A stretch of DNA of 64,000 nucleotides, from positions 1 through 64,000 of IMG/VR virus record IMGVR_UViG_3300042350_002797. The stretch is one strand, 5' to 3'. The stretch's first letter is position 1. Each line of letters starts with the position of its first letter. Position numbers and translations under genes: made by a program. Shown here piece by piece: positions 4,483-46,254 of this stretch. Under the pieces are notes generated by a model. It searched no databases and was not told the DNA's origin. It saw nothing but the letters and a program-made list of their open reading frames with translations.

Positions 4483-5337
4483 TCACGCTGGACTGTCTTG
4501 ATCTTTCTGGTCTAGTTTGCGCTTTAACAATGTGCCTAGACCAGTTTTTTTCTTTGGAGTATCCGCAGGTGGTGCAGGCGGCATCATTTTATTAGTACGT
4601 GGTCCAGATTTAATCTCATCATAATCAGGAATACTAGCACCGCCATCACTAATTGGATCCATCAAGACCAGTTGTGGTCCTACACTACTGCCACGCACAC
4701 GTATATTGTTCACGTGCAGATCCACATTCCAGTCTGGGTTTTCCTGTATAATTTTATCAATCAACAACAGTGCTTCTTTAAGTTGATCATCACGTATGTT
4801 TGTGTAGTTACTGCGTTCTACAGCACGATTAATTTGATTGGATATTTCTCTCCATACTGCATATGATTTGTTAGTAGTTCCTTCTAGATAACGCATATTG
4901 AATTCGTCGTTGAACAAACGTTCGTACATGCCAATAAGTGTTCTAGCTGGAAAGCTATCGCCCTGCTGTAGTTTTTCTATACGATAACGTGGACGTTGAT
5001 TACCCTTAGGATCTTGTGTAATGTCTATGTTATAGACCTGTGGAAAGAATGGATTGTGATAGCCCTGCTGTTTTAAGTCACGTATTTCCATAACGTACTT
5101 ATAGTAAGCATCTTTATCCAGTTTAGCAGTAAGATGTGGTTTCTTAATAAATTCGTGTGGATCGCGGGGATTAGTTTGTCCGCCACTGTACCAGCCTGGT
5201 TGTACGCCTTTGTTAAGTTCGCTGTCATTGTCGCGTTCTTGTTTGTCTTTAAGGGCATCAAAGTCAAAGCTAGGTTTACGATATCTTATCTTTTGATCAG
5301 TAGTATCGTATTCTTGTAGTATTTCTATAATTCGCAT
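4483..5337 (-). CDS. Protein-kinase-like (PKL) fold protein
   Basis: GWYSG glycine-loop-like, FIKK lysine, DLHVNN catalytic loop, LMDP metal-binding motif. Confidence 0.6.
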   Translation of the reverse strand: MRIIEILQEYDTTDQKIRYRKPSFDFDALKDKQERDNDSELNKGVQPGWYSGGQTNPRDPHEFIKKPHLTAKLDKDAYYKYVMEIRDLKQQGYHNPFFPQVYNIDITQDPKGNQRPRYRIEKLQQGDSFPARTLIGMYERLFNDEFNMRYLEGTTNKSYAVWREISNQINRAVERSNYTNIRDDQLKEALLLIDKIIQENPDWNVDLHVNNIRVRGSSVGPQLVLMDPISDGGASIPDYDEIKSGPRTNKMMPPAPPADTPKKKTGLGTLLKRKLDQKDQDSPA

Positions 5338-5437
5338 GTGTATATTTAATCGTGATTACCGTAATCTGTATTTTTTAACATAACGACTATAACTGCTATC
5401 ACTATAAGTAGGAGAAATAAATTTATTAGATCAAACA

Positions 5438-5677
5438 TTATTTTAGTCCTTTTTTTCTGTTAGATTCTGCTATACCTGACTGTATCATTTTTTTAAACAT
5501 TAATACTACACGACTTTTTTCTTTTTCGCTGAGTATTTTTACTAGTGTAAGTTTATCGTCATAGCTTTTGGCATTGTCCAGGAATTCAGCCGGTACTGCC
5601 AATTTAGGCTTTTTCTTAGCCATTTCTTTCTTCATATTAGCTAGGGCCTTGTCAGGGTCGTCGTTATCAGTAGTCAT
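5438..5677 (-). CDS. Hypothetical basic protein
   Basis: 79-aa ORF, AAAGGA SD, TAAATA upstream. Confidence 0.65.
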   Translation of the reverse strand: MTTDNDDPDKALANMKKEMAKKKPKLAVPAEFLDNAKSYDDKLTLVKILSEKEKSRVVLMFKKMIQSGIAESNRKKGLK

Positions 5678-5703
5678 AGTGATCCTTTCTAAGTCTATTT
5701 TAT

Positions 5704-6483
5704 TTACTTAGGTTCGCAGTCCACCCAACGTAAATTATTATAGTGTTCATAGGGCCACGTACCCTTAGGTACTAAACAAGTGCCTAATTCAGGTTGGTGT
5801 TCCATGCGTATTTGTACCACAGCCCATATTAACCAAATAAGATATAATATAGCCACAGTACTGCTAGACCAGCACAGTATTTTATATTGTATGCGTTTTT
5901 TGCGACGTGCCCGAATCTTCTTTTGTTCTGCTGTTCGTCGCATCTCTGCAGCAATGACAATACTTTGTTCTTTGCCCACTTTCTTCATCATCTCTTCGAC
6001 ATCAAGATACAATGGACCTAATTCTGGTGGACTTTGATAGACCATAATTTCACGCAATTCTGCGCTCATGTGTTCTAGTTGTTTTTTAAGTAATACTCGC
6101 ATTAATGCACGTTTACCTAAACTGTCTTCGCCGTGATATACTTCAGTTCTGCTGCGACGTTCTTCTTCTTCAAATACTGCTAGACATTTATAATAGTTGT
6201 CAAAATATGTTCCAAGATGTTGGCCAATTTCTGTATAGATGTTAGTAGTTTCGCCACCCTTTTTGTTCAGTTCTATTATGCGATTTTTTTCTGTGATAAA
6301 CTGATTACGTTCAGCCACAGTAGGTTGACGATCCTTGAATTTATTGGCGAATTGGTCGTCAAGGTCTTTAAGGATATCTTTGACATCCCCAGCAGCACCT
6401 TTAATTTCTTTATATAGTTCGCACCCTTTTTTGACCGCCTGGACTGCTCCGTTGGCCAGGGCAAAAAGGGTTAGCGGATCCAA
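5704..6483 (-). CDS. Coiled-coil protein with C-terminal transmembrane helix (TTG start)
   Basis: 259 aa; basic stretch RARRKKR then hydrophobic helix; GGAG upstream of TTG. Confidence 0.75.
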   Translation of the reverse strand: MDPLTLFALANGAVQAVKKGCELYKEIKGAAGDVKDILKDLDDQFANKFKDRQPTVAERNQFITEKNRIIELNKKGGETTNIYTEIGQHLGTYFDNYYKCLAVFEEEERRSRTEVYHGEDSLGKRALMRVLLKKQLEHMSAELREIMVYQSPPELGPLYLDVEEMMKKVGKEQSIVIAAEMRRTAEQKKIRARRKKRIQYKILCWSSSTVAILYLIWLIWAVVQIRMEHQPELGTCLVPKGTWPYEHYNNLRWVDCEPK

Positions 6484-6531
6484 GATCTAGATCTCCGCAT
6501 GGTTCGCTCCAAATTGTTCGCTCAGTAGTAT

Positions 6532-6975: not shown

Positions 6976-6993
6976 ACACTATTATTTATAGTG

Positions 6994-9383: not shown

Positions 9384-9390
9384 AATTGGC

Positions 9391-9504
9391 CTACTTATAG
9401 ATAAAAGGATCTCTTGCTTTTAGTTCTTGTAAACGTTTTTTCCATTTACGATGTTCTAAGTATCTATTATACGGATACATTAAGATTTCTAAAATTTTTT
9501 TCAT
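9391..9504 (-). CDS. Small basic protein (37 aa)
   Basis: Hand translation MKKILEILMYPYNRYLEHRKWKKRLQELKARDPFIYK fills the gap between primase and carbamoyltransferase. Confidence 0.6.
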   Translation of the reverse strand: MKKILEILMYPYNRYLEHRKWKKRLQELKARDPFIYK

Positions 9505-9505
9505 A

Positions 9506-10474: not shown

Positions 10475-10483
10475 AGATATATT

Positions 10484-11296: not shown

Positions 11297-11309
11297 CTTA
11301 ACTGTATTT

Positions 11310-11687
11310 ATGGCGAAATTAAGAGAAAACATACAAGAACAATTACCCTTTATTTCTGTGCTTCATTATGGAGAAAGCGAATACGTTGGGATTATAATAA
11401 ATCAAGATCAATACGTAACTAGTTTTTTTGATTTGAGCATGTTAAAAACTGCTGAAGATAAAGCTGGATTATTAGAGATCGGAGAAATTTGGTGGTGGGA
11501 ATCTAACAGACAGGTTCCTATAAACATATTTCTTAGAAAGGAAATAGAACCTTATCGATACGCTATTAAAACCTTTAATAGCAAAGATGTCAGAATAATG
11601 CTCGGGCCAGTAGTGAATTTATTAAATTTAACTATAAAACGAGTTAAAAGAAAAAGTGTTCAGTTAGTAAGAGCCCCAAAACGTTAA
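11310..11687 (+). CDS. Hypothetical protein
   Basis: 125-aa ORF; TATAAATA at 11271-11278 upstream. Confidence 0.7.
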   Translation: MAKLRENIQEQLPFISVLHYGESEYVGIIINQDQYVTSFFDLSMLKTAEDKAGLLEIGEIWWWESNRQVPINIFLRKEIEPYRYAIKTFNSKDVRIMLGPVVNLLNLTIKRVKRKSVQLVRAPKR

Positions 11688-23264: not shown

Positions 23265-24921
23265 TTACAATTCTCCAAGCTAATCCTGATCGCATTTCGT
23301 CTACGGTAAATTGTGCGTATGCTAAATGACATGCCCAGTGATGCACTTCATCGAGTGTTGGTATGTAAGGTGTTTCAATTTTTGACAAATCTGACAGGCA
23401 AAGGCTTTGTGCAGCATTTGGTCCTAAAGTAAATGCAGGTTTTCCTAACAATAATGCTTCTGTAGCAGCTATACTGTTAAAAGTCACTAAACAATGCACA
23501 TCACGAGATAACGCCATTTCCATTGTGTCAGTAGTTACTCTTTCTGCACGACCTTTTTTAATTCTTGTTATTATCGGCCTATCAGTATACTGTTTTATAG
23601 TGTTAATAGTAGTAGTCAACCATTCGTCTAAATCTAATTCATAAAATGCCATCGCCTTAGCACTAGGCGGACAAAGAAGAATACTAGATCCTCTTCTAAA
23701 CTTTGTTAAGCTCATTCCGGTGGCTTCGAATCTGTCTGCTGGTCTATCTAACACAGGTCCTATATTTTGCATGGAGTTTTTTGTAACCCTATGATATAAT
23801 TTTTTACGACCGTTTCCAAAATATCCTGTATCTATATAATAGAAATCTCTTCCAATTTCTTGACAGCTTTTCATTTGTTTACGTTTAGTAATTCCTCTTA
23901 AAAGTACAGGTTGAGATTTAGGCTCGGCGATGTCCCAAGTACTAATTTGACCTCCAGCTCCTAATACAAAATTTTGTAAAATAGGGTCGTACATATGTCC
24001 TTTCTCCAAATATTTTACTTCGTTACTATCTGAATTAACAGAAATTATAGAATCTACTGTTAAATTTTTAATTTGTTCTACTATGCTTTTTGTAGTAATA
24101 TTATAATAACTTCCGGATGGGTCCACCCTATATTTCAATATACTGTCAAAAATATTTTTAATTTCATCTGGAACAGATTCGTACGGGCTTAGTAGAGGAG
24201 CTGGTGCAGTATGTTTTAAATATTCATATTTTTCTTGAAGCCATGTAGCACCGTATTCGCAATTAAGATAATTAGGAAACCAAGGACCGCCTTCAGTATA
24301 ATGAATAGCTTTAGGCGAACCGTCTTTAGGTTCGTGGTACCAATTTACTAACCAGTTCCATTCATGGTTGATTGTACCTATCTCTTCATCTTTAAGCCAT
24401 TGAAATCTATGTAAGAATGCTCCAGTTTGACTGTTAACTAGTTCTGGAGTTAGTAGTTGATTCGAAGGATGTTGACAGTTAAACAAAATCAACGAGCTCC
24501 AATTTTTTCTAGGATATAAATGTTGTGTTTGATTATCCATCTTGGTAGAATTTGTTGGATTATATTCGTGATGAACACACATTACAGCATATTGCTGATT
24601 TTCCTTTCTCCAAGCAACTTCAAATAATTTAGTTATATCTTCTAAAAACAAAAAATCACAATCACAAAATATGGCCCATCCTTTATATTCGGAAAGATAA
24701 GGAACTAAAAATCTTGTAAAAGTAAATTCCGTTGAACTTAATGGATCTACTTCCCTTGTATAGATTTTTTGTTCTCTAAGTTCTTGCTGATCTAAAGGTT
24801 CGACTTGTACACCCGAACTTCTTCTATGAATAGAATATTTACAAATTTCATAGGCAATATCTTCTCTAGAATCGTACCCAACATATACTTTCATTTTCTT
24901 TCTATGTCCTCTTCTACACAA
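23254..24921 (-). CDS. GT8-like glycosyltransferase fused to a KpsS-like domain
   Basis: VYVGYDSRE, STEFTFTRF, FCDCD, PRKNWSS, IHYTEGGPW; C-terminal LVTFNSIAATEALLLGKP. Confidence 0.7.
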   Translation of the reverse strand: MCRRGHRKKMKVYVGYDSREDIAYEICKYSIHRRSSGVQVEPLDQQELREQKIYTREVDPLSSTEFTFTRFLVPYLSEYKGWAIFCDCDFLFLEDITKLFEVAWRKENQQYAVMCVHHEYNPTNSTKMDNQTQHLYPRKNWSSLILFNCQHPSNQLLTPELVNSQTGAFLHRFQWLKDEEIGTINHEWNWLVNWYHEPKDGSPKAIHYTEGGPWFPNYLNCEYGATWLQEKYEYLKHTAPAPLLSPYESVPDEIKNIFDSILKYRVDPSGSYYNITTKSIVEQIKNLTVDSIISVNSDSNEVKYLEKGHMYDPILQNFVLGAGGQISTWDIAEPKSQPVLLRGITKRKQMKSCQEIGRDFYYIDTGYFGNGRKKLYHRVTKNSMQNIGPVLDRPADRFEATGMSLTKFRRGSSILLCPPSAKAMAFYELDLDEWLTTTINTIKQYTDRPIITRIKKGRAERVTTDTMEMALSRDVHCLVTFNSIAATEALLLGKPAFTLGPNAAQSLCLSDLSKIETPYIPTLDEVHHWACHLAYAQFTVDEMRSGLAWRIVSET

Positions 24922-25655: not shown

Positions 25656-25673
25656 GCTGATATTTATATTGGG

Positions 25674-30821: not shown

Positions 30822-33278
30822 TTATTTAAGCCCTGCAATTCTAAGCATAGCTGCTAATTCGGAACTCTCTAATGAACGTAGGTTTCTATCTTGTTTTGTA
30901 ATACCTGGTCCCATTTTAGGCTGAGCCATTTGTCCACTTTGTGGTTTAGGTTGGGGTTGACCACCTTGTCCCATTTTTGGCGGTGGCTGAATTTTTTTAG
31001 GAGCCTGGTATCCTTTGCCAAAGGCACCACGATCGATTGGAAATTTTTGACTGGATTCTGGATCAACTTCGTCAGGTGTCTGAAATGACCCTGGTCCAGG
31101 TCCAGGATCTCTGAGAGTACCTTGCTGACCTGCTTGCTGACCTGCTTGGAAATTAGTTGCTAAATCTGATACACCTTGACGAATATTGCCAACTGTATCT
31201 CTTACACCTTTTTGTACTTTTCCAACTGCACTACCTGCCTTGTAGGCCAGATCGTCACCGAAGCCTTCTTCAAAATCATCTTTGGTGTTTACTGCTTTTG
31301 ACCCTTTATCTAATGCTTTGGTATCTTTGTCATGTGGATTTACATATGTTGATTTGGGATCAAATTGGGTTGCTATCTCTTTTCTGTTAGCCTTGTCAAC
31401 ATCGTACATACTAGGTGATGTTTTAGTTTGTGTTGTTTTTGACGCAGAAGAATTTCCTACTTCACCTAAACCAGATAATTCTTGAATTCGACGCATTTCT
31501 GCTTGTGTCATTAATTCATTCATAATGTGCTTGGCTTTACCTAAAGCTTCTTCACCAAATTTTTTCTCTACTGAAATTAATACGCCAGTTGGTCCTTTTG
31601 GTGTGTTGCCGTTTTCGTCAAACATACTTTTAACAAATTCTACTACTTCGTCGCCACTATCTGCATATCCTTGATCGAAAAATTCATTTACATTTAATCC
31701 AGCTCGTTGTATAGCATCTGCTAACGATACTTCTTCTCCAAATAATGTAAATGTATCTTCTGCTGTCATACCTGCTCTTTTTGCACGTTCTACTACTCGT
31801 TTAATATTTTCAGCCATGGCTACTCCTGGTGTTGTTGGCATACTAGGTGGTACAGCAGGAGCTGCTGCTTCTGGCGGAGGTGCGGCAGGTGCTGGCTCTG
31901 CTGTTGGTTCAGGTGCTGGTTCTGCTGAAAAATTAAGTTTACTTAAAACATCCGTTCCGTTTTCTTGATCTTTAATAGTAACATAATCTTTGATAATATT
32001 TCTTACATCCGAATCAGGGTTAATATCAGCTAATTCTTTAAACACATCGACAAGCTCTTTATCATCTATAATTTCTGACAAACTTTCAATGGCATTTGTG
32101 CCATCTGTTCCTACTGGAAATTCTTGAGCTAGCAAACTGTTTAATTTTTCAATAGCCACCGATTGTTCTTCTTGATTATTACTAAAAATATCGGGACCTT
32201 CACCTAAAATTTTGTTAAGATAATTTTCAAATTGTTGTTCTACATCTAAAGAATGTTTTTCAATAGATACTGGTGCGGAAGATAAATTGCCAGTTTCTTC
32301 TACTGAAACAAATTCGTCAAAATTCATTTCTTTTATTGGATCAATATCTTGGCCGACTATTTTATAAATGTAAGGAAATACACCTTTTAATTCTTCATTA
32401 AATGTCTTAATTGTTAACCTGTCTACCCAATCGTTAATAATGTCTTCTGGAATTTCTTGTACTTCTGATTTAGTAAACGATTCACTAAAACTCTGATAAT
32501 AAGAGTGTTTTTGTAACTGATTTATTTCTTTTTTAACTTCTTCTATTCTTTCAATTACTCTTACAGTAATGTCACTCATTGCTTCTGACACAACCGGAGT
32601 TCTTCCTACATAACCCTTAAATTTTCTAAGATTAGACAATTCTTCGCTGAGACTAACAATATATTGACCGATATCGTCGTAAGGAATGCCGCCGTTTCTA
32701 ATATGTTCGGCCATAGCCCTTGCACCGTTAATATGGCGCATTGGGTATTTAAATCTTTCCCCTTGAGCATTTTCAATATAAATGCTTTCGATGTGCATGG
32801 TTCTACCAGCTGGGATGTTTGGATTAATTGGCTGAGTATGTCTAATAATTAACTTAGTCTCTCCTAAGTCCTGATAACTGGTTTTTAAACTACCCTGCAA
32901 CTTACTTTCAGTCATTTGTGAATCTCCACGTTTTTGAATATTTGTTAGGTTCAAATCTCTCACTTCAAAATTAAGAATCTTTTGTTTAGCAAATTTTCGT
33001 AATTCTTCTATAAAATTAAACCATATAGTTTTTATTCTGCTGGATTGATCTTTAATTACATCATTGCTAAACATTACTGTAAGACCGTCTTCTTCGGTAA
33101 GATCAATTCTAATACTGCCCAACGATATATTATTCTTTTTGAATTCAAAATCGAACTGACGAGCTAATTTTTCTTCGTCAGTAGGGTTTCCTTCTGCATC
33201 TTTTAAGCTGACCTTAGGAAAGGTGGATCTTAATTTTGCAAACAGTTCTTGAGCAGCTAAATCTAAGTTTTTTTCCAT
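30822..33278 (-). CDS. Large acidic hypothetical protein, probably virion/head-associated
   Basis: 818 aa, Pro/Ala linker, Q/P/G-rich tail, late promoter, next to terminase. Confidence 0.7.
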   Translation of the reverse strand: MEKNLDLAAQELFAKLRSTFPKVSLKDAEGNPTDEEKLARQFDFEFKKNNISLGSIRIDLTEEDGLTVMFSNDVIKDQSSRIKTIWFNFIEELRKFAKQKILNFEVRDLNLTNIQKRGDSQMTESKLQGSLKTSYQDLGETKLIIRHTQPINPNIPAGRTMHIESIYIENAQGERFKYPMRHINGARAMAEHIRNGGIPYDDIGQYIVSLSEELSNLRKFKGYVGRTPVVSEAMSDITVRVIERIEEVKKEINQLQKHSYYQSFSESFTKSEVQEIPEDIINDWVDRLTIKTFNEELKGVFPYIYKIVGQDIDPIKEMNFDEFVSVEETGNLSSAPVSIEKHSLDVEQQFENYLNKILGEGPDIFSNNQEEQSVAIEKLNSLLAQEFPVGTDGTNAIESLSEIIDDKELVDVFKELADINPDSDVRNIIKDYVTIKDQENGTDVLSKLNFSAEPAPEPTAEPAPAAPPPEAAAPAVPPSMPTTPGVAMAENIKRVVERAKRAGMTAEDTFTLFGEEVSLADAIQRAGLNVNEFFDQGYADSGDEVVEFVKSMFDENGNTPKGPTGVLISVEKKFGEEALGKAKHIMNELMTQAEMRRIQELSGLGEVGNSSASKTTQTKTSPSMYDVDKANRKEIATQFDPKSTYVNPHDKDTKALDKGSKAVNTKDDFEEGFGDDLAYKAGSAVGKVQKGVRDTVGNIRQGVSDLATNFQAGQQAGQQGTLRDPGPGPGSFQTPDEVDPESSQKFPIDRGAFGKGYQAPKKIQPPPKMGQGGQPQPKPQSGQMAQPKMGPGITKQDRNLRSLESSELAAMLRIAGLK

Positions 33279-33286
33279 ACTGATAT

Positions 33287-34885
33287 TTATCCAAGCATAC
33301 TTGAAACAAAAATGGGCATAGGAAGCTCGTAATCCTCATCCTCTAAGCCCTCATTAGAACTGAAAGTATCAAAGACTCTGCTATCCCAATCTGCTAAAAC
33401 TTGGCTCATACGTACAATAAGCAGTAATGCACTTACTAAATCGTCTTGTTCTCCAGCTTTAGCTTTAAATGTAATACCGGCGGCTACAAATGCTTTAAGC
33501 TCCGATATAAGAGGTTTAGAGTGAATCTTCATTTTACCTGATTCTACAAGGTATTTTAATCTTGCTGCCGCAGAAATTTTAGTTTTATGTGTAGTATTGA
33601 ACCCTTTTCTAAATTTTCTCACATGCCCTTTTCTTATAGGTTCGCTGACAAAAAGACCTGGAAAATGTTCTTCTCCTATGTCTCTAATACAGATTAGTCC
33701 AGCTTCTCCAATATTGTTATTTTCTAAGCTCCAATATATATTTCGACTATTATCATCGCCTACACAATCTTGTAAGTATTTTAATATTTCTTTTAAAATT
33801 TTTATTTGTCCTTGAATAGGAGTCAAATTATGCTGCCATTCGGCAACCTGAATGAAACTAGGTAGTTCGAACACTTGAATGCCTGCACTATTGCCACCAG
33901 TGCCTAAACTTGGATCTAACGCAATTGCATAAATGTGATCTTTGCTAGGAGTCTTGTACCAGCGTGTTTGCCCCATGTTCATTATAGGTTGCTTGCCGTC
34001 TAATCCGGCAAGACAAATACTGCTAATTAGAGTTTCGTCATAAATTAAGAATTCGCAATTATATTCTCTACGAAATCGTTCTTCACCAATGCGTCCACGT
34101 TCTTGTGAAGCCCATGCATCGTCACGATCTGGATGTTCATCCCAAGTACATGTAAAAGGAAAAAAGCCGTTAACTCCTACATCTTGTTCATTGCCAAATT
34201 CGTCAAATTTTTTGTTAGCTTCTTTCCAAATTGTAGCAAAGGTATCTTCGTCACTGTTAGGGGTACTAGTGATAATAGCTTTACCACCAGTAGCCAATGT
34301 CGGAGAAATTGATGTCCAAAATTCGTCAGCAATATTAGGTGGTACAAAAGCAAACTCATCACAGTATAGTAATGAAATACTCATACCACGACCTGTATTA
34401 CCTGTAGTAGTAGTTGATATAATACGACTACCATTATCAAACTCAATACTGCCTTTGTTATAGTTAATTACACCGCAGCGTATATGGTCTGGACAAAGCT
34501 CGTAGGCATAACGAACACGTTGCATGATTTCCTGCGAACCTGTATATTTGTGTGCAGAGATTAATATAGTCTGGTCCGGGTGAAACATAGCATACCACAA
34601 TAAGTATCCGGCGGCACAGGTAGTTTTACCCATTTGCCTAGGTAACATATTAATATTAAATCTATGCCCGTGATATGCATCTAATAATCTTGACTGATAG
34701 TCATACGGCTCGAACAGCATTTTTCCTTTTACAGGGTGCTGTATGTAAAAAAAGTTGTCGCAAAAATAATGATACCCGTTGTCAGTATCTGCACATTTTA
34801 ACAGATCCTCTATTTGAAGTTCTGTAAAGGTTTCTTTTGTGTGTGCCTTTTTAGTTAGGACACCATCCAAACTTTTGCTTGCCAT
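33287..34885 (-). CDS. gp17: Terminase large subunit (T4 gp17-like)
   Basis: PRQMGKTT Walker A, LYCDEFAF Walker B, ITSTPN, ALDPSLG nuclease, QDDLVSA. Confidence 0.95.
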   Translation of the reverse strand: MASKSLDGVLTKKAHTKETFTELQIEDLLKCADTDNGYHYFCDNFFYIQHPVKGKMLFEPYDYQSRLLDAYHGHRFNINMLPRQMGKTTCAAGYLLWYAMFHPDQTILISAHKYTGSQEIMQRVRYAYELCPDHIRCGVINYNKGSIEFDNGSRIISTTTTGNTGRGMSISLLYCDEFAFVPPNIADEFWTSISPTLATGGKAIITSTPNSDEDTFATIWKEANKKFDEFGNEQDVGVNGFFPFTCTWDEHPDRDDAWASQERGRIGEERFRREYNCEFLIYDETLISSICLAGLDGKQPIMNMGQTRWYKTPSKDHIYAIALDPSLGTGGNSAGIQVFELPSFIQVAEWQHNLTPIQGQIKILKEILKYLQDCVGDDNSRNIYWSLENNNIGEAGLICIRDIGEEHFPGLFVSEPIRKGHVRKFRKGFNTTHKTKISAAARLKYLVESGKMKIHSKPLISELKAFVAAGITFKAKAGEQDDLVSALLLIVRMSQVLADWDSRVFDTFSSNEGLEDEDYELPMPIFVSSMLG

Positions 34886-34897
34886 AGTTTTATTTAC

Positions 34898-34926
34898 AAA
34901 AAAATAGCCCCTTAATGGGGCTATTT
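34898..34926 (-). terminator. Rho-independent terminator
   Basis: AAATAGCCCC-TTAAT-GGGGCTATTT with adjacent A run (U tract on -). Confidence 0.8.
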
Positions 34927-36185: not shown

Positions 36186-36206
36186 ATAGCAGTCCTAATA
36201 GTGTAT

Positions 36207-36677
36207 TTATTTCATATTCTTCAGTTTTTCCAACAAGCTATTTCTATCTGAGATAATAACGCTGGAATTTGTAATATCTTGGCTTTCATCGCCTTTATCA
36301 TTGTCTAGCTTTTGTTTCTTTAATTGTAATTCTACCATTTTGAGCTTTTTGTCTATTTTTGCTGCTTTAGCATCAATGGCATTCTTTAACATAGTGCTTG
36401 CAACTTCGAATACTCGCCCACTATATCTAGCTTCTACATTCATGCCTAAATCCATTAAGTCATCAAATGCATCTGTAGCTCGTTGAGCAAGCTCGTCAAA
36501 TTCTTTATCGCTGATGTCGCCTAATCCTTTAACTTGCGGCAAAGCCGCTGCAATCTTATCAAACTCGCTGATATCTCTTAACAAAGGTTGTGTGGCTTCT
36601 ACAGCTTTACTCTTTTCTTCTTTTTTAATTAGCTTTTTGCTTTCTGGTAAATTTAAGACTTCTTCTAGCTTTTTCAT
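36207..36677 (-). CDS. gp16: Terminase small subunit (T4 gp16-like)
   Basis: Helical, RVFEVASTMLK motif and coiled coil typical of gp16-like TerS; near TerL. Confidence 0.6.
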   Translation of the reverse strand: MKKLEEVLNLPESKKLIKKEEKSKAVEATQPLLRDISEFDKIAAALPQVKGLGDISDKEFDELAQRATDAFDDLMDLGMNVEARYSGRVFEVASTMLKNAIDAKAAKIDKKLKMVELQLKKQKLDNDKGDESQDITNSSVIISDRNSLLEKLKNMK

Positions 36678-36685
36678 ATAATTAC

Positions 36686-37123
36686 TTATCTTAAACGACC
36701 GTTATAAAATAAATCTTGTTCATTTAAAACTCTAAATTTTATGCCTTGCTTTGAGCACCACGATTGAGCTGCTCTCCATTTAACTTGATTCTTAGCCCAT
36801 TGTAATTGATTATTACGATTTTTGCCGGCTTTTTCGAGCAAGGTTTGACTTTGAGGTTTAATTTCTATTAGCTCGACTTGCATTATACCTTTTTTATCTG
36901 CATATTGTATAAAGAAGTCTGGAACATATACAGTTTGGCGACCAGTAAACGGATCTTTGTAAGGAATTTTTACTGCTTCGCTAGCCCATTTTAATATTCT
37001 AGGATCTTTATCACAAAAATTCATAAAGTTCCATTCCCAACTACTTCTATATGTAGGAGAACTATTACCTACATACTTTTCTACGTTAGTGACTGTAAAC
37101 TTTCCTCTTGCAAATTTGGACAT
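36686..37123 (-). CDS. gp4: Head completion nuclease (T4 gp4 / TnsA-like)
   Basis: YRSSWE, WASE, YVPDF, IEIKP, AKNQVKWRAA. Confidence 0.85.
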   Translation of the reverse strand: MSKFARGKFTVTNVEKYVGNSSPTYRSSWEWNFMNFCDKDPRILKWASEAVKIPYKDPFTGRQTVYVPDFFIQYADKKGIMQVELIEIKPQSQTLLEKAGKNRNNQLQWAKNQVKWRAAQSWCSKQGIKFRVLNEQDLFYNGRLR

Positions 37124-37497: not shown

Positions 37498-37498
37498 A

Positions 37499-38557
37499 TT
37501 ATGGATTTAAATTTCTAGGCTGAGCAACTGTAGGAACTGATGAATCACTTACTGGAAATGTTGTATTTCTTACAGCGCCGGCACTATTTCCAGTTACTGT
37601 GGATAAACTTCGATTGGTCACGTTAGTTAATTCTTCTGTTATACCAGTTCTACTTAATTGTTGTGAATTATTATAAGTGTTTACCGCAGTTATTGCAGTA
37701 GCTACAAAATTTGCAGGACTAGAAAATGCCTGACCGGATGCTACAGATCCAAACACAGAACTTGCTCCTGCTAGTACTCCGCCTGCGCCAAATAAAGATC
37801 TGGTGCCGCCACCAGCTAACGATATAGGACTCGGCACTGTATCATAATGATCGACTCCGAATCCTAACGGATTTCCTTGAGACACTAAACCATTTTCGTA
37901 GTATACTGACTCATAAGCTAATGTCATTGATTGCTCACCTGTGTTATTACTGGTATAATCTAATGAATCGTGATTCCAGGAAGTAATTAATGGATTTACT
38001 AAAGTATAACTGTTCCAATACTTTCTGGCCATTTGGTATATAACCACACTGTCAAAAAAAGGTATAGAACTGTTATTATCTAGTCCAAATGGAGATTTAA
38101 TGTAATTCTTTCCTAGAGTGGCTGTTCTAAAATAATTACCTTGAATTTTTGATGCTATTGGATCGGCATAATAATAACTAAAATAGTTTTCCCATAATTG
38201 TCGTGTAACGCCTAGGTTGTCATCGTGAAATTTAATACTAACTGGTTGATAATCAATTTTTGTTTGAACAACTTTTTTTCTATTGTATTGATTAGCAGTT
38301 TCGGAACTTATTGTAAATTTTGGTAAGTCAGCTGATTTTACTAGGATACCTATTTCATTTTGATGTTGGAATTTAAAGTTTAAACTTTTAAGAGCGTTAG
38401 TGTTTATTTTAAAAAACACATGAAATAAAAATTTAGATTTAGGTGCTAATCTAAAATTATCATCGACAAAGGTTCTAGCAGCGTGTCTAAAATCTCCAAG
38501 GTTTCCCTTAGGATTGAAGAATCCACTAACAAACTGACGTAAGGCTTTATTAGACAT
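37499..38557 (-). CDS. Tail tube-like / baseplate-tube initiator protein
   Basis: VKSADLPKF, NQYNRK, PVSIKFHDD, LTLAYE-like pattern of the gp19/gp54 fold; next to tube gene. Confidence 0.5.
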   Translation of the reverse strand: MSNKALRQFVSGFFNPKGNLGDFRHAARTFVDDNFRLAPKSKFLFHVFFKINTNALKSLNFKFQHQNEIGILVKSADLPKFTISSETANQYNRKKVVQTKIDYQPVSIKFHDDNLGVTRQLWENYFSYYYADPIASKIQGNYFRTATLGKNYIKSPFGLDNNSSIPFFDSVVIYQMARKYWNSYTLVNPLITSWNHDSLDYTSNNTGEQSMTLAYESVYYENGLVSQGNPLGFGVDHYDTVPSPISLAGGGTRSLFGAGGVLAGASSVFGSVASGQAFSSPANFVATAITAVNTYNNSQQLSRTGITEELTNVTNRSLSTVTGNSAGAVRNTTFPVSDSSVPTVAQPRNLNP

Positions 38558-38576
38558 ACAATTATTTATCGAACAA

Positions 38577-38596
38577 TATTAACTACGTAGTTAATA
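38577..38596. repeat. Perfect 20-bp palindrome
   Basis: TATTAACTAC-GTAGTTAATA. Confidence 0.9.
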
Positions 38597-38605
38597 CAAA
38601 GTCAT

Positions 38606-38633
38606 AAAAAAGCAGCTTTTCAGCTGCTTTTTT
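38606..38633 (-). terminator. Rho-independent (possibly bidirectional) terminator after tail tube
   Basis: AAAAAAGCAGCT-TTTC-AGCTGCTTTTTT. Confidence 0.85.
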
Positions 38634-38634
38634 A

Positions 38635-39264
38635 TTAACGTCTTCCGCTGCCTGTAGCTAATACACCTAGTGCTCTTGCTACATTAGTGCCTACTCCAGT
38701 GCCTTGTGGTGTTTGTACACAGTTGTCTGGTTGAATTGTTAAATCGATCATAGCAGGTCCTTGTTCACCGTAGCCTAAACTTTGATAGTTTACAGTTGTT
38801 AGGTAACAACCATAACATTCCCAAGTTTCTAGAACAGTAACGGTGTCGGCGCCGTTACCACCGTCTAACATTTCAAGACGCAGATTAAACTTATAATCAA
38901 TAGCACTTGCTGCACTACTCTGCTCAAGAAAGTCAAATTGTTTCTGTAATTGTTCACCAACAAGTTTTTGCACATTATTACTAACATCATCACGTAATGT
39001 AATTGCAATAGGTTGCCATGTGTGCTTGCCTGCATAATTGATTTTACTGTTGTAAATTTCAATTACTTGGTTTGCAAACTGTACTTGTGGTCGAGCCGCA
39101 GTTTGTACTTGTTTAGTTAGTTCAGTAGTAGGAGTAGAAACACCAAAATTTTCAAACATCACTCTAAAGCGATATTTTAGTTTTGGCATCAACATCCCTT
39201 GCGATGATGCAGACGCATCGCTTGCTAGAGGAACTGTAAATTTTGATAATGATGAAATTGCCAT
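38635..39264 (-). CDS. gp19: Tail tube protein (T4 gp19-like)
   Basis: PKLKYRFRV, YAGKHTWQPIAITLRDD, WECYGC; directly downstream of sheath. Confidence 0.85.
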   Translation of the reverse strand: MAISSLSKFTVPLASDASASSQGMLMPKLKYRFRVMFENFGVSTPTTELTKQVQTAARPQVQFANQVIEIYNSKINYAGKHTWQPIAITLRDDVSNNVQKLVGEQLQKQFDFLEQSSAASAIDYKFNLRLEMLDGGNGADTVTVLETWECYGCYLTTVNYQSLGYGEQGPAMIDLTIQPDNCVQTPQGTGVGTNVARALGVLATGSGRR

Positions 39265-39281
39265 ATTTTAATCCTTTTATT

Positions 39282-42200: not shown

Positions 42201-42677
42201 TCCACCGGTTACAGAAGCTGCTGCACCATTCCATTCAAAAATACCAAATTTACTTGCGGCTAAATCTAACCAATGTGTTCCATTTGCAGCATCGGCAGTT
42301 GGTTCGTCTGCTGATGCAGTTAGTGCGTCTAGATCTACATCAGCACGTACAACATATGCACGATTGCTAACGCCTAATAAGCTATAGGCCGCTTGTAAAC
42401 CATATTCATTTTGTTCTCCTGCATGTACAGGATTATTATTTGCATCGGTCTTGAATACCGGATCACCAAATGTATCCACTAAGTCTTTTTGACTTGTCAT
42501 TAGATAGACTGTGCCAGCATTTGCTTTTAAGGTTCCTGGTGCAGTTCCGGTGCCTGCGCCATTTAATTTATTCTGAGCAGAAGCCACAACAATTAAAGGA
42601 ACGGTTCCTGGTTCTGCTGGTGTGTAAAACGATTCGTCAATAACGCTGACTTCTACGCCTGGTGATGTTAATGCCAT
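39282..42677 (-). CDS. gp18: Contractile tail sheath protein (T4 gp18-like; start re-called to MALTSPGV)
   Basis: SPGVEVSVIDES N-terminus, PWFAPAGVRRG, INPLT, DRINVARL, FEPND, EFIYIP; AAGGAG SD before ATG 42677. Confidence 0.93.
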   Translation of the reverse strand: MALTSPGVEVSVIDESFYTPAEPGTVPLIVVASAQNKLNGAGTGTAPGTLKANAGTVYLMTSQKDLVDTFGDPVFKTDANNNPVHAGEQNEYGLQAAYSLLGVSNRAYVVRADVDLDALTASADEPTADAANGTHWLDLAASKFGIFEWNGAAASVTGGQKFTNKVPRIINALSQVDLGTGGPVASIGSIGDYAIVAADGTADTPALATTHPMTVWYKSRGNSEYGISAGTWVEVGSGDWAASWPVLTGTESNPTLSSGTIRINGVNIVFSGTTVSQLATAINAANVDGVKALITNGKVEITSNAEIGLNPEDSSQSNAINIQSISGTILTDIGITAGTYYAPELQISKHTQVPVWKLSPAAGQSVRPTGSVWIKTTTPNLGADLKLKRYNSATSLWEIVSAALYANGHSALYGLDSAGGGANLAAGTCYVQTNYTEDLGADATPTKANFKLFRRSATGSTSIKTSSVETGTFTSGSKTFTISESDAGSDILSSISVTWTAAGTSADAATLAAAINAAGFANIEAEVDVLNKVVISHAQGGDFRLVDVTDSTLTQAGFVAYVYEPSSPSFGTGTANLQSVPAGDSVHIGGFIATLWHPLVYVANVDAPGSLTEDGTLWYNSVIDEVDILIHDGTSWVGYKFGSGGNPYTGTDAAGPIVSATKPETQSDGTSALVTGDLWIDTSDLENFPTIYKYNASIPSGNKWVLVDTSDQTSEDGILFADARWSVTGEDSDTASTISDLLGSEYIDPDAPDPALYPRGMLLWNTRRSGFNVKRFVRNYIDTTDTNGRFGDEAMTSYYPHRWVTESPNQADGTASLGRKSQRAVVVRALQALVNSNQQIRDEESRVFNLIACPGYPELIGELITLNYDRGLTAFVVGDTPPRLTSDATSLLSWASNENGATEDNDVGAVSFDEYMAMFYPWGFTSDNFGNNVVVPPSHMMLRTIALNDQVAYPWFAPAGVRRGGITNATSVGYVTSEGEFTSVSLNTGQRDTLYSQKINPLTFLTGTGLVNYGQKTRSRSTSALDRINVARLVVYLRRQLNALAKPYIFEPNDKITRDEIKAAVESLMLELVGQRAIYDYIVVCDESNNTPSRIDRNELYIDIAIEPVKAIEFIYIPLRLKNTGEIASLG

Positions 42678-42784
42678 CTGAATCTCCTTGGAGTTTTGTT
42701 CAGTAGTATTTATTGTCAAAACCAAAAATTAACTGGTTATAAGTAGTAGAAAAGGGATAAAAAAGGTGTGGTATAAATAAAATT

Positions 42785-43736: not shown

Positions 43737-43787
43737 AGTGTCTCCTAACACTATAATTTATTATATTTTTGTTACAATGTCAATAGA

Positions 43788-44144: not shown

Positions 44145-44145
44145 G

Positions 44146-44907
44146 TTAACCTATGACAAATGTATAACCTGTACCACCAGCAACTAATAATTCTAATTCT
44201 TTTTCTAATTTTTCTATTTCTTCTTTGCCTGCTGCTTTTAAATCGCCACCGTTTAGTTGTCCTGATCCGCCTGGACCAGCAATAGCGCCAAATTTGCTAC
44301 GTGCTTCACCTAACATCATTTTACAGTTTGCTAGAGTATAATCTCTAATCCATTGTTTGGCTAGGTAATCCTCCATAATTACGTAGTCAGGTCTATAATT
44401 CTGACATCTTAACATAATCACTTCGCCTTCTGTAAAGGGACGTTGTAGAATTCTTAAAGTATGAGTGGTTGGAATCCATTGAAACTCAATATAGCTACCA
44501 AAAATTCTTCCTACCATTTCTTGATAGCTGGCAAACATATAATAAGTGGCTATACCTCCTAACATGGTGCTGTTTAAAAGATAAGTGTTAGTATATGCTA
44601 AATTAAAAGGCTCAAAATTTGTGCCTGTGCCACCGCCAGTTCTAGACCCTAATGTGCGTCTAAACACACTTTGAACATTTACGATTTCCTCAGGAAGTTT
44701 ATAATCATTTTTATCTTTTTCTAAGGTCAAGAACATATAGCTTTCTTCAACACTGTTAGGGCTTCTTTGCCTAAATTTGCTCATTGTTCTTTCTAGTGCA
44801 GTTTGATAATGTATAGGATCTAATTCTACATCGACCATACCGTCGCCCAGCATGGTACGACAAAAATCATATATATTTTGCTTGATTTCTTCAGGATTAT
44901 TTGCCAT
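44146..44907 (-). CDS. gp13: Neck protein (T4 gp13-like)
   Basis: VDVELDPIHY, WIRDYTLA, KMMLGEARSKF, GPGG..LNG, FVIG C-terminus. Confidence 0.85.
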   Translation of the reverse strand: MANNPEEIKQNIYDFCRTMLGDGMVDVELDPIHYQTALERTMSKFRQRSPNSVEESYMFLTLEKDKNDYKLPEEIVNVQSVFRRTLGSRTGGGTGTNFEPFNLAYTNTYLLNSTMLGGIATYYMFASYQEMVGRIFGSYIEFQWIPTTHTLRILQRPFTEGEVIMLRCQNYRPDYVIMEDYLAKQWIRDYTLANCKMMLGEARSKFGAIAGPGGSGQLNGGDLKAAGKEEIEKLEKELELLVAGGTGYTFVIG

Positions 44908-44946
44908 ACGAATCTCCAGTAGTATTTATTCGCTAAATATTATACT

Positions 44947-46254
44947 ATGCCGCGTTTATCATTATTTCGTCCTGAAAAGGGCAATGACTACAAATTTATA
45001 GATCGTCAGATTTCTGAAATGTTTCAAGTTGGTGGAACTGATGTTTATCTACACAAATATTTAGGTCCGAAGAATACCAGCGAAGCTGAAGCTACAGCAG
45101 ACCAACCTCATTATGACGTAGTGAAAGAAACAAATATTCAGGATCTGTTGTTTTTAGAAAATCGCGATAGAAAATACAGCGAAGATATCTATAGAATTAG
45201 AGGGCACTATCAAGTTCAGGACATTGACTTTAATTTAAGTCAGTTTGGGTTATTCTTAGATAATGATATGGTTTACATGACTGTGCATATTAACAATTTT
45301 GTAAGCACTGTCGGACGTAAGCCGTTAGCAGGTGATGTTTTTGAATTTTTACACTTAAAAGATGAATATGCATTAAACGAATTTGATACTGCTATGCCAA
45401 GATATTTTGTTATTGAAGATGTTGGTAGGGCAGCAGAAGGATTTAGTGCTACGTGGTGGCCGCACCTATATAGATTAAAATTAAAGAAAATATCCGACAG
45501 TCAACAGTATGCAGATATTTTAAACAAACCGGCTAATCAAGATGCTAATTTTGTAGGCGATTATGATAGTTCTACTACCTACCAAGTAGGTCAGATTGTA
45601 AGATACGAAGGAACACTGTACACGGTTACAGCAGAAACTACAGGTAACGTTCCTCCTAACGCTAGCTATTTTTCAGTGTACAGTGGAAATACTATCGAAA
45701 ATATTGTTAGTAATAGAGTAAAAAATTTAGAAATCAATGATGCAATTTTATCACAAGCGGAGGCAAATACTCCAAAAAGTGGTTACGAAACACAACAATT
45801 TTATACTCTAGCAATAGACACTAACACTGGACTACCTTTATTACGCACTGCTGACGAAACAGATATCGATGTTAGTCAAGAAACTAGTCATAGTCCAGAT
45901 GCTAGTGCTATTCATGCTAGACCACAAAGATCTGGTTATACTGGTTATCTATTAGGAGACGGTGTTCCTAGTAACGGCGCAGATTTTGGCCATGGTATAG
46001 CTTTTCCTACTACTGCAAGAGATGGGGACTTTTTCTTGAGAACAGATTTTTTTCCTAATAGACTGTTTAGATTCAATGGAAGCAGTTGGGTTAAAAAAGA
46101 AGATGCTGTGCGACATACATTAACTAACACTGATACTCGTTCGACACATAGGACCAGTTTTATTAATAATACTAATACTGCTGTAATAAATGACGAAGTT
46201 GTCGAAGAGCGTCAAAGTTTAAGTAAAGCATTAAAACCTAAGGCGGATTTTTAA
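44947..46254 (+). CDS. gp14: Neck protein (T4 gp14-like) with internal extension
   Basis: GGTDVYLHKY, LFLENRDRKY, LSQFGLF, WWPHLY; divergent from gp13. Confidence 0.75.
   Translation: MPRLSLFRPEKGNDYKFIDRQISEMFQVGGTDVYLHKYLGPKNTSEAEATADQPHYDVVKETNIQDLLFLENRDRKYSEDIYRIRGHYQVQDIDFNLSQFGLFLDNDMVYMTVHINNFVSTVGRKPLAGDVFEFLHLKDEYALNEFDTAMPRYFVIEDVGRAAEGFSATWWPHLYRLKLKKISDSQQYADILNKPANQDANFVGDYDSSTTYQVGQIVRYEGTLYTVTAETTGNVPPNASYFSVYSGNTIENIVSNRVKNLEINDAILSQAEANTPKSGYETQQFYTLAIDTNTGLPLLRTADETDIDVSQETSHSPDASAIHARPQRSGYTGYLLGDGVPSNGADFGHGIAFPTTARDGDFFLRTDFFPNRLFRFNGSSWVKKEDAVRHTLTNTDTRSTHRTSFINNTNTAVINDEVVEERQSLSKALKPKADF

What the first reader, a model, noticed from the sequence alone, without database searches (positions are those of the whole stretch)
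5337..44947. Many late genes appear leaderless: TAAATA exactly 5 nt before ATG, no SD
Spacing from TAAATA/TAAGTA to ATG is 5 nt for genes starting at 5337, 25655, 33278, 34885 (TerL), 36677 (TerS), 38557 and 42785, 7 nt at 6975 and 44947, and 8 nt at 11296. With T4-type late promoter geometry (motif ending near -6) the transcript would start at or within 3 nt of the A of ATG. Bulk structural genes (sheath, tube, gp13) instead keep AGGA/GGAG leaders. Two translation modes in one late programme could set stoichiometry and would make packaging genes insensitive to SD masking or anti-SD damage.
Basis: partly seen in the sequence, partly recalled or inferred. Interest (0 to 1): 0.7.

Follow-up and report, generated by a model that had tools for sequence, protein, structure and literature searches.

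The report
Late promoters fused to start codons
In this 364-kb lake-water jumbo phage and about 80 relatives, a T4-style late promoter box sits 4-5 bases before the ATG of about 7% of genes, including both terminase subunits, so these late messages probably start at the start codon with no ribosome-binding leader; four cultured relatives checked lack this layout.

Summary
All ten sites check out. Genome-wide, 27 of 385 called genes have TAA[AG]TA 4-7 nt before their first ATG, against 4.5 ± 2.05 in shuffles. At exactly 5 nt the count is 15 against 1.1.

- **Distance distribution:** it is bimodal. One peak is at 4-7 nt with no SD. A second mode is at 15-24 nt, mostly with an SD. Between 9 and 13 nt there is almost nothing.
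- **The motif:** (G/A)ATAAATA is the most enriched upstream 7-mer, is depleted elsewhere, and precedes tail-fibre, baseplate, sheath and packaging genes. The genome encodes a gp55-family late sigma.
- **Geometry:** the T4 box spans -13 to -6, so a 5-nt spacing puts +1 on the A of ATG.
- **Conservation:** in about 45-50 unique ortholog sequences per gene (four genes), the 4-5 nt spacing is kept while the spacer sequence varies. The base before the ATG is a pyrimidine in 132/132 cases, as expected at a start site.
- **Extra support:** terminator hairpins abut two of these promoters.
- **Controls:** T4, PA5oct, CBB and Vibrio phage 2.275.O show no such class.

Transcript 5' ends could not be mapped, so "leaderless" remains a well-supported inference. 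It is a new variant of T4-type late expression. The stoichiometry and anti-SD ideas are untested.

The parts
34891..34896 (-). TAAATA late-promoter box, 5 nt before the TerL ATG at 34885
   Evidence: In 47 of 50 unique ortholog upstream sequences the box lies 4-5 nt from the ATG, with 34 distinct spacers.
34902..34926 (-). Terminator-like hairpin (10 pairs plus a T-run) abutting the TerL promoter box
   Evidence: The stem sequence differs between relatives while pairing is kept. Any TerL-specific promoter must therefore lie in the ~16 nt between the stem and the ATG.
33287..34885 (-). Large terminase gene, near-ATG class, no SD
   Evidence: Pfam Terminase_6N and Terminase_6C. 56% identical to PA5oct TerL.
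33284..33289 (-). ATAAATA box whose TAA is the TerL stop codon, 5 nt before the ATG at 33278
   Evidence: The box is at 4-6 nt in 36 of 42 unique ortholog sequences.
30822..33278 (-). 818-aa virion structural protein gene, near-ATG class
   Evidence: phrog_13484.
36683..36688 (-). TAAGTA variant box, 5 nt before the ATG at 36677; its TAA is the stop of the upstream gene
   Evidence: The G variant is kept in orthologs, with the box at 4-5 nt in 47 of 51.
36207..36677 (-). Probable small terminase gene, near-ATG class
   Evidence: phrog_445, E = 5e-6.
38563..38568 (-). TAAATA box, 5 nt before the ATG at 38557
   Evidence: The box is at 4-6 nt in 42 of 43 orthologs.
38604..38635 (-). Terminator-like hairpin (14 pairs) after the tail-tube gene and upstream of the 38557 promoter box
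37499..38557 (-). Tube-like paralog gene (352 aa), near-ATG class
   Evidence: phrog_13438 and phrog_4542, E about 1e-13. Weak Pfam gp19 match.
25661..25666 (-). TATAAATA box, 5 nt before the ATG at 25655 (cytidylyltransferase/cupin sugar-nucleotide enzyme, 24891-25655)
5343..5348 (-). TAAATA box, 5 nt before the ATG at 5337 (284-aa protein of unknown function, 4483-5337)
6983..6988 (-). TATAAATA box, 7 nt before the ATG at 6975 (147-aa protein of unknown function)
9392..9397 (-).
11305..11310 (-). TAAATA box, 8 nt before the ATG at 11296; doubtful site
   Evidence: An in-frame ATG at 11332 lies upstream and the base before the ATG is G.
42774..42779 (+). TATAAATA box, 5 nt before the ATG at 42785 (113-aa gene, first gene of a + strand unit)
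44934..44939 (+). TAAATA box, 7 nt before the ATG at 44947 (435-aa virion structural protein, first gene of a + strand unit)
42707..42712 (-). Leadered comparison: TAAATA box 30 nt before the sheath ATG at 42676, with an AAGGAG SD in the leader
36204..36209 (-). Leadered comparison: TAAATA box 18 nt before the ATG at 36185, with an AGGA SD
   Evidence: Orthologs keep 18-19 nt in 36 of 51.
44923..44928 (-). Leadered comparison: TAAATA box 15 nt before the ATG at 44907, with a GGAG SD

Best explanation
(G/A)ATAA(A/G)TA is this phage's late promoter. It is a T4-type extended -10 box with no -35 element, read by host RNA polymerase carrying the phage's gp55-family sigma.

The box is used in two layouts.
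- **Leadered layout (about 45 genes).** The box lies 15-24 nt before the ATG. This gives a minimal 10-19 nt leader that carries little more than an SD. Tail fibres and baseplate proteins are in this class; the sheath is leadered too, with its box 30 nt upstream. The capsid and tube genes also have SD leaders.
- **Near-ATG layout (about 27 genes; 11 in this window).** The box ends 4-7 nt, usually 5 nt, before the ATG. Transcription then starts on or within about 3 nt of the A of the ATG. The message is leaderless and must be translated by the SD-independent pathway that recognises a 5'-terminal AUG. TerL, TerS, a tube-like paralog and two virion structural proteins are in this class.

**Shown here:** the motif, its enrichment and depletion, its link with structural genes, the sigma gene, the bimodal spacing, its conservation, the pyrimidine at -1, the lack of an SD or alternative starts, and the adjacent terminators.

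**Inferred:** that the gp55-like sigma reads the box, that the start site lies 5-6 nt downstream as in T4, and that the resulting leaderless RNAs are translated.
For: - **Motif identity.** ATAAATA is the most enriched 7-mer in the 120 nt upstream of genes, found before 55 genes against 4.2 expected. It is depleted elsewhere. Both layouts share the same flanks: G or A at -2, A at -1, and non-G after the box.
- **Late genes.** Leadered copies precede tail fibres, baseplate wedge proteins, virion proteins and the sheath.
- **Sigma.** The gp55 homolog matches phrog_12791 at 2.4e-80 and phrog_234 at 1.3e-24, and T4 gp55 at E = 1.7e-6.
- **Geometry.** The T4 box spans -13 to -6 (PMC2988020), so the modal 5-nt spacing puts +1 on the A of the ATG.
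- **Distribution.** 27 genes at 4-7 nt against 4.5 ± 2.05 in shuffles. There is a near-empty gap at 9-13 nt, where a leader would be too short to hold an SD, and a second mode at 15-24 nt.
- **Conservation.** The box is at 4-5 nt in 47/50 TerL, 34/42 g33278, 47/51 TerS and 39/43 tube-like ortholog sequences, with 18-34 different spacers per gene. Across 790 unique starts in relatives' loci, 156 have the box at 5 nt and 35 at 4 nt.
- **Start-site signature.** The base before the ATG is a pyrimidine in 25/25 near-class genes with spacing of 5 nt or more, against 49% of all genes. It is a pyrimidine in 132/132 ortholog sequences at 5 nt.
- **Start codons.** No near-class gene has an SD. Only 1 of 28 has a downstream SD-led alternative start. 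Most have a stop within 1-27 codons upstream and no upstream start.
- **Terminators.** Terminator hairpins lie 20-53 nt upstream of the ATG of TerL, the tube-like gene and the gene at genome 264445.
- **Heads of transcription units.** Several near-class genes head strand-switched units: 42785, 44947 and 247073 among others.
Against: - No 5' end was mapped. RNA contigs from four metatranscriptomes cover the region at only about 2-3x, in pieces of 150-290 nt.
- The sigma is 273 aa against 185 aa in T4, with an extra N-terminal part, so its start-site geometry could differ.
- No gp33 or gp45 homolog was found by sequence.
- TAAATA at -11 to -6 occupies the same position as the SD core, so a role at the RNA level is conceivable.
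- 14 of 28 near-class genes lie 20 nt or less behind a same-strand gene and would also sit on read-through transcripts. In 4 of 28 the box contains the upstream stop codon.
- The host is unknown. If it resembles E. coli, leaderless translation is usually inefficient.
- The orthologs are related to each other, so their counts are not independent events.
Confidence: 0.66

Rival explanations
1. The box next to the ATG acts in the RNA, not the DNA. These cistrons would be translated from longer polycistronic late transcripts that start upstream. The AU-rich UAAAUA at the SD position, sometimes supplying the upstream stop codon, would promote SD-independent initiation or termination-reinitiation, for instance through an unstructured AU-rich entry site or ribosomes altered by the phage's bS21.
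For: - TAAATA occupies -11 to -6, the same position as AGGAGA in SD-led genes.
- 14 of 28 near-class genes follow a same-strand gene by 20 nt or less, and 4 of 28 boxes contain that gene's stop codon.
- The genome encodes a bS21 directly downstream of two near-class genes.
Against: - The same box with the same flanks sits 15-24 nt upstream of SD-led late genes, where it cannot serve as a ribosome site.
- The modal spacing equals the T4 box-to-+1 distance.
- The invariant pyrimidine at -1 is a start-site signature, not a known translation signal.
- Terminators directly precede two boxes in the window.
- Several near-class genes head strand-switched units with no upstream same-strand gene.
- bS21 is also encoded by PA5oct and Vibrio phage 2.275.O, which lack the near-ATG class.
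Confidence: 0.15
2. The boxes are real late promoters, but they mainly serve the genes downstream. Genome compaction has squeezed them against the next ATG. The first cistron would then be translated poorly or not at all from these transcripts, and the exact spacing would have no translational meaning.
For: - The genome is compact, with about 90% coding by a crude gene call.
- Leadered late promoters here are also unusually close to the ATG, at 15-21 nt against 21-33 nt in T4, CBB and the Vibrio phage.
Against: - Compaction alone predicts a spread of spacings. It does not predict a peak at 5 nt with a near-empty gap at 9-13 nt.
- It does not predict 4-5 nt being kept in more than 90% of orthologs of three of the four genes, and 81% of the fourth, while the spacer sequence drifts.
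- It does not predict a fixed pyrimidine at -1.
- TerL and TerS are essential genes and have no SD or alternative start.
Confidence: 0.12
3. The pattern is a chance or compositional artefact of an AT-rich genome, or comes from wrongly chosen start codons.
For: - The genome is 36% G+C, and upstream regions are A/T-rich.
- The gene calls used here are home-made.
Against: - Shuffles and control hexamers show no peak.
- The same script finds no such peak in four genomes of similar G+C: T4, PA5oct, CBB and Vibrio phage 2.275.O.
- The motif-first scan does not depend on gene calls.
- Ortholog alignments reach residue 1 at these ATGs.
- A first-ATG rule cannot favour 5 nt, because the TAA of the box is out of frame at that spacing (read directly from the sequence).
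Confidence: 0.02

Closest known systems
T4 late promoters (TATAAATA; gp55 sigma, gp33 co-activator, gp45 sliding clamp)
   Same: An A/T-rich extended -10 box with no -35 element lies upstream of structural and late genes. A gp55-family sigma is encoded. The segment after the box is AT-rich (PMC2988020).
   Different: - In T4 no TAAATA lies 4-8 nt from a first ATG, and no ATAAATA or TATAAATA lies closer than 12 nt. The mode is 21-29 nt, so messages are leadered and SD-dependent.
- Here about 27 genes have the box at 4-7 nt.
- The consensus here is (G/A)ATAAATA with a tolerated TAAGTA variant.
- The sigma is 273 aa.
- No gp33 or gp45 homolog was detected.
Predicted ATAAATA late motif of Rak2-like jumbo phages (Pectobacterium phage CBB, Cronobacter phage GAP32)
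   Same: The same core motif was reported before structural genes at 35 sites in CBB, together with a gp55-like sigma and no detectable gp33 or gp45 (PMC5259590). This phage's TerL groups with PA5oct among cultured phages, and a preprint on PA5oct describes it as related to the Rak2-like phages.
   Different: In CBB the motif lies 12 nt or more from the ATG, mostly 23-35 nt, and none lies at 4-7 nt. PA5oct and Vibrio phage 2.275.O also lack the near-ATG class.
Leaderless transcripts of Thermus phages phiYS40 and Lalka27a
   Same: Phage transcripts whose 5' end is the A or G of the start codon, with a -10-like element just upstream (bioRxiv 10.64898/2026.04.20.719267, citing Sevostyanova et al. 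2007).
   Different: - Those phages infect Thermus, in a phylum where leaderless expression is common (PMC12340547).
- Their promoter consensus is different (TAGGGT in Lalka27a), and they are not gp55-type.
- Most of their transcripts are leaderless. Here only about 7% of genes are, alongside SD-led late genes.
- Their start sites are mapped experimentally. Here they are inferred.
Host-type leaderless genes with a -10 element next to the ORF (Deinococcus-Thermus, mycobacteria, lambda cI from PRM)
   Same: A -10 element lies a fixed short distance before the start codon, there is no SD, and an ATG start is used (PMC12340547; PMC4633059 listed).
   Different: Those use the housekeeping sigma. 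Here the box belongs to a phage late sigma, and the layout is a conserved trait of one phage clade.

Membership tests
T4-type (gp55-dependent) late promoter | TATAAATA-like extended -10 box with no conserved -35 element | tested here: met
   The consensus is (G/A)ATAA(A/G)TA. Positions -10 to -3 before the box show no conservation in either class. It is the top enriched upstream 7-mer.
T4-type (gp55-dependent) late promoter | The phage encodes a gp55-family sigma factor | tested here: met
   Genome 97406-98227 (-): T4 gp55 matches at E = 1.7e-6. phrog_12791 matches at 2.4e-80 and phrog_234 'late sigma transcription factor' at 1.3e-24. There is no Pfam hit.
T4-type (gp55-dependent) late promoter | Located upstream of late (virion, packaging) genes | tested here: met
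   The box precedes tail fibres, baseplate wedge proteins, sheath, virion proteins, TerL and TerS. Timing of expression was not measured.
T4-type (gp55-dependent) late promoter | gp33 co-activator and gp45 sliding-clamp activator | tested here: inconclusive
   T4 gp33 and gp45 give no match in the genome. These proteins diverge quickly, and CBB authors also found none.
T4-type (gp55-dependent) late promoter | Transcription starts 5-6 nt downstream of the box | not testable with these tools
   RNA contigs were too sparse. The pyrimidine at -1 with A at +1 on the ATG is indirect support.
Leaderless mRNA | The transcript 5' end lies at, or within a few nt of, the start codon | tested here: inconclusive
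   Two read-laying attempts on four metatranscriptomes each gave 150-290-nt contigs at depth about 2-3, and none ended at a candidate ATG.
Leaderless mRNA | No Shine-Dalgarno sequence, and no room for one | tested here: met
   0 of 28 near-class genes have an SD-like word, against about half of the other genes.
Leaderless mRNA | A promoter -10 element lies a fixed 5-8 nt before the start codon | tested here: met
   The mode is 5 nt. It is conserved in orthologs.
Leaderless mRNA | AUG start codon, the true start of the protein | tested here: met
   All near-class starts are ATG, although the scan looked only for ATG. They have no upstream start, a nearby upstream stop, and only 1 of 28 has a downstream SD-led alternative. 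Ortholog alignments reach residue 1.

The most novel reading that the evidence does not exclude
A whole freshwater clade of gp55-type jumbo phages would have evolved a promoter-encoded translational switch. By placing the late box so that +1 falls on the start codon, it would run a defined subset of late genes (DNA packaging, minor virion parts, accessory genes) through SD-independent leaderless initiation, while bulk virion proteins stay SD-driven. In a host that uses SD, this would imply that late infection changes the translation machinery to favour 5'-terminal AUGs, or that these genes are kept deliberately low and immune to host or phage interference with the anti-SD.
Probability: 0.15. 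Interest if true: 0.8.

Novelty: new variant of a known kind. Interest (0 to 1): 0.6.

Why it matters
T4-type late transcription is a textbook system, and its messages are thought of as leadered and SD-dependent. This work shows a large, abundant and uncultured freshwater clade in which the same kind of promoter is locked 4-5 nt from the start codon of essential genes such as both terminase subunits.

- **Biology.** If the start sites are confirmed, this would be the first gp55-type phage found in this search with a systematic leaderless late class. It would be a natural case of two initiation modes within one temporal class.
- **Annotation.** In these phages a (G/A)ATAAATA box followed by 4-7 nt and an ATG marks a true gene start that SD-based gene callers may misplace. 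The sheath shows that start calls here need checking: the mechanical ORF list begins it at a TTG at 42725, but the real start is the ATG at 42676.
- **Testability.** The sigma, the promoter and a reporter could be tested in vitro or in E. coli without culturing the host.

Tried and rejected
- **RNA evidence.** No start site could be read from them, and they do not even prove transcription.
- **Host identification.**
  - The closest bS21 proteins carry no organism names.
  - A genome-collection scan with bS21 gave only one distant Saccharimonadales match.
  - Upstream words argue for a host that uses sigma-70 promoters and SD, and against Bacteroidota: TTGAC-N16-19-TAnnnT occurs 38 times against 2 expected, and TAnnTTTG is not enriched.
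- **Link between bS21 and the leaderless class.** Rejected as a specific link, because PA5oct and Vibrio phage 2.275.O also encode bS21 but lack the near-ATG class.
- **Other phage-encoded translation factors.** No IF3 or S1 domain was found.
- **Stop-codon or translational-coupling explanation.** Only 4 of 28 boxes contain the upstream stop codon.
- **Terminators as a general feature.** Only 3 of 28 near-class genes have a terminator-like hairpin in the 80 nt upstream, so this supports a few sites only.
- **The freshwater bS21 phages of Chen et al. 2022.** They differ in gene layout (their bS21 lies next to TerL and the capsid gene) and in predicted host (Bacteroidetes), so they are not the same group.
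- **The PA5oct paper.** It lists only sigma-70-like promoters and gives no late-promoter or start-site data usable here.
- **The phiYS40 primary paper.** It is not held in the library and is cited only through papers that refer to it.

Full report
**What the window is.**
- The window is bases 1-64000 of a 364,554-bp virus record, rated 100% complete.
- The sequence is held at full length by many lake-water metagenomes.
- It is 36% G+C.
- Its large terminase is 56% identical to that of Pseudomonas jumbo phage PA5oct. More distant matches are Sinorhizobium phage Phosso, Agrobacterium phage Atu_ph07 and Vibrio phage 2.275.O.
- No near-identical record is in the phage collection.
- IMG/VR holds at least 598 contigs that encode a related TerL. 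The best 80 (75-100% identity) were fetched with flanks as L003-L082.

**Checking the observation.**
- The extended motif is (G/A)ATAA(A/G)TA.
- TAAATA is strongly avoided overall. The window has 55 copies against 124.6 ± 11.2 expected. The genome has 281 copies, against 646-935 for four of five similar AT-rich hexamers.
- A motif-first scan that does not depend on gene calls shows a peak at 5 nt in the distance from TAAATA to an ATG opening an ORF of 60 aa or more. Five control hexamers show no such peak.
- Most of these ATGs are the first possible start of their ORF, with a stop a few codons upstream.
- With a crude gene call (385 genes, about 90% of the genome), 27 genes have TAA[AG]TA at 4-7 nt. 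Five hundred dinucleotide shuffles of the upstream regions give 4.5 ± 2.05 (maximum 12). At exactly 5 nt the count is 15 against 1.1 (maximum 5).
- The distribution is bimodal. One mode is at 4-8 nt (28 genes, none with an SD). The range 9-13 nt is almost empty. A second mode lies at 15-24 nt, where most genes have an SD.
- At positions -11 to -6, TAAATA is second only to the SD word AGGAGA.

**What the motif is.**
- ATAAATA is the most enriched 7-mer in the 120 nt upstream of genes, at 55 genes against 4.2 expected.
- Leadered copies precede tail fibres, baseplate wedge proteins, virion structural proteins and the sheath.
- The near-ATG and leadered classes share the same flanking preferences, so it is one signal used in two layouts.
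- The genome encodes a gp55-family late sigma at 97406-98227 (-). T4 gp55 matches it at E = 1.7e-6, phrog_12791 at 2.4e-80 and phrog_234 at 1.3e-24.
- T4 gp33 and gp45 find nothing.
- The same situation was described for the Rak2-like phage CBB. Its authors predicted an ATAAATA late motif at 35 sites before structural genes, found a gp55-like sigma, and found no gp33 or gp45 (PMC5259590).

**Geometry.** Geiduschek and Kassavetis number the first T of the T4 TATAAATA box as -13, so the box spans -13 to -6 and five bases separate it from +1 (PMC2988020).

**Independent support for a start site on the ATG.**
1. **Conservation of spacing.**
   - In unique ortholog upstream sequences the box is 4-5 nt from the ATG in 47/50 (TerL), 34/42 (the 818-aa protein), 47/51 (TerS) and 39/43 (tube-like paralog).
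   - The spacers are variable, with 18-34 distinct spacers per gene, while the box itself is invariant.
   - Most apparent exceptions are artefacts of my start picking.
   - A few relatives (L067, L074, L082, L068) carry an AAGGAAG-type SD instead of the box before TerL.
   - Over 790 unique ORF starts in the relatives' loci, 156 have the box at 5 nt, 35 at 4 nt, and 49 at 18-19 nt.
2. **Pyrimidine at -1.**
   - The base before the ATG is a pyrimidine in 25/25 near-class genes with spacing of 5 nt or more, against 49% of all genes.
   - It is a pyrimidine in 132/132 ortholog sequences at 5 nt and in 156/156 at the clade level.
   - Pyrimidine at -1 with purine at +1 is the usual preference of bacterial RNA polymerase at start sites (my own knowledge).
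3. **Terminators.**
   - Terminator-like hairpins sit directly upstream of the TerL box (34902-34926) and the tube-like gene's box (38604-38635).
   - The TerL hairpin keeps its pairing in relatives with different stem sequences.
   - Only about 16 nt lie between that stem and the ATG, so a promoter serving TerL must start transcription essentially at the ATG.
4. **Heads of transcription units.** Several near-class genes (42785, 44947 and others outside the window) are the first gene after a strand switch.
5. **No alternative starts.** Only 1 of 28 near-class genes has a downstream in-frame start with an SD. That gene (genome 166322) is probably a leadered case.

**Controls in other phages.** The same script was run on T4, PA5oct, CBB and Vibrio phage 2.275.O, all 33-38% G+C. 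None has a near-ATG class; each has 0-1 genes at 4-7 nt. Their motif-to-ATG modes lie at about 21-33 nt, compared with 15-21 nt for the leadered class here. The layout is therefore specific to this freshwater clade. It is not a general property of AT-rich phages or of gp55-type phages.

**Which genes fall in which class.**

| Class | Genes |
|---|---|
| Near-ATG | TerL, probable TerS, a tube-like paralog, virion structural proteins of 818 and 435 aa, a sugar-nucleotide enzyme, a carbamoyltransferase-like protein, a radical-SAM protein, a peptidase, many proteins of unknown function |
| Near-ATG, inside or beside the tRNA array | Several small genes |
| SD-led | Major capsid protein (AGGAG), true tail tube (AAGGA), sheath (AAGGAG), fibres, baseplate |

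The near-ATG class is broader than packaging genes, however.

**Rival explanations.**
- **A role at the RNA level, or translational coupling.** This is the main rival. The box occupies the SD position, half of the near-class genes (14 of 28) follow another gene by 20 nt or less, and four boxes contain the upstream stop codon. It does not explain the identity with the leadered promoter box, the match to T4 geometry, the pyrimidine at -1, the terminators, or the genes that head their own units.
- **A specific link to the phage's ribosomal protein bS21.** The bS21 gene lies at genome 274907-275131. The link is unlikely, because PA5oct and the Vibrio phage also encode bS21 but lack the near-ATG class.
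- **Genome compaction alone.** It does not predict the sharp peak, the gap at 9-13 nt, or the conservation.
- **Chance or wrong start codons.** Both are rejected.

**What is known.**
- Leaderless phage transcripts with mapped 5' ends are described for Thermus phages phiYS40 and Lalka27a. Their host phylum commonly places a -10 element next to ORFs (PMC12340547).
- phiKZ has no leaderless transcripts (PMC8244752).
- AR9 has 5' UTRs of 26-491 nt (PMC5312081).
- My searches found no report of leaderless late genes driven by a gp55-type promoter. The library is incomplete, so this is not proof that none exists.

**Limits.**
- No transcript 5' end was seen.
- The host is unknown. Upstream words point to a host that uses sigma-70 promoters and SD, not to Bacteroidota.
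- The gene calls are home-made.
- Ortholog counts are not phylogenetically independent.

**Verdict.** The promoter identity is very likely. Leaderless (or at most 3-nt leader) late messages are the best-supported reading, at about two in three. This is a new variant of a known kind.

Noticed in passing
Outside the window: genome 274907-275131 (-), which is L119:12907-13131: The phage encodes a ribosomal protein bS21 (Pfam PF01165, E = 7.4e-17). The gene is SD-led (GAGGA) and lies directly downstream of two near-ATG-class genes. bS21 is also present in PA5oct and Vibrio phage 2.275.O but not in T4, so it is a wider clade trait and is not tied to the leaderless-type promoters.
   Followed up: partly
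Outside the window: genome 350196-350271 (+), which is L123:16196-16271: There is a tRNA with a CUA anticodon, which would read TAG (ARAGORN calls it tRNA-Pyl). TAG is the rarest stop in the crude gene set, at 13 of 385 against 267 TAA and 105 TGA. This could be an amber suppressor. The genome is about 90% coding under the standard code, so no recoding is needed to read it.
   Followed up: partly
Outside the window: genome about 244200-252000 (-) and 361939-362186 (+): The genome carries about 27 tRNA genes in a large array. Several small near-ATG-class genes (ATGs at 247073, 249732, 251113, 252668) are interspersed in or beside it. Late promoters may therefore also drive tRNA expression.
   Followed up: no
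window 42676-42725 (-): The mechanical ORF list starts the sheath ORF at a TTG at 42725. The real start is almost certainly the ATG at 42676, preceded by AAGGAG, with a TAAATA box 30 nt upstream. The 42677-42784 gap is a divergent late-promoter region.
   Followed up: yes
Whole genome, upstream regions: Classical sigma-70-type promoters (TTGAC-N16-19-TAnnnT) occur in 38 upstream regions against about 2 expected. The Bacteroidota -7 motif TAnnTTTG is not enriched. About half of the genes have an SD. The unknown host is therefore probably a bacterium that uses sigma-70 promoters and SD.
   Followed up: partly
window 48083-54583 (-): There is a 2166-aa ORF, by far the longest in the window. It was not examined.
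   Followed up: no
Loci L067, L074, L082 and L068 (TerL upstream): A few relatives have replaced the TerL TAAATA-N5-ATG layout with an AAGGAAG or AAGG SD and no box. Switching between the two initiation modes therefore occurs within the clade.
   Followed up: partly
Outside the window: genome 166322 (-): This gene was counted in the near-ATG class, but it has GGAG within its first codons and a second ATG 12 nt downstream. It may really be a leadered gene with the box 17 nt from the true start.
   Followed up: partly
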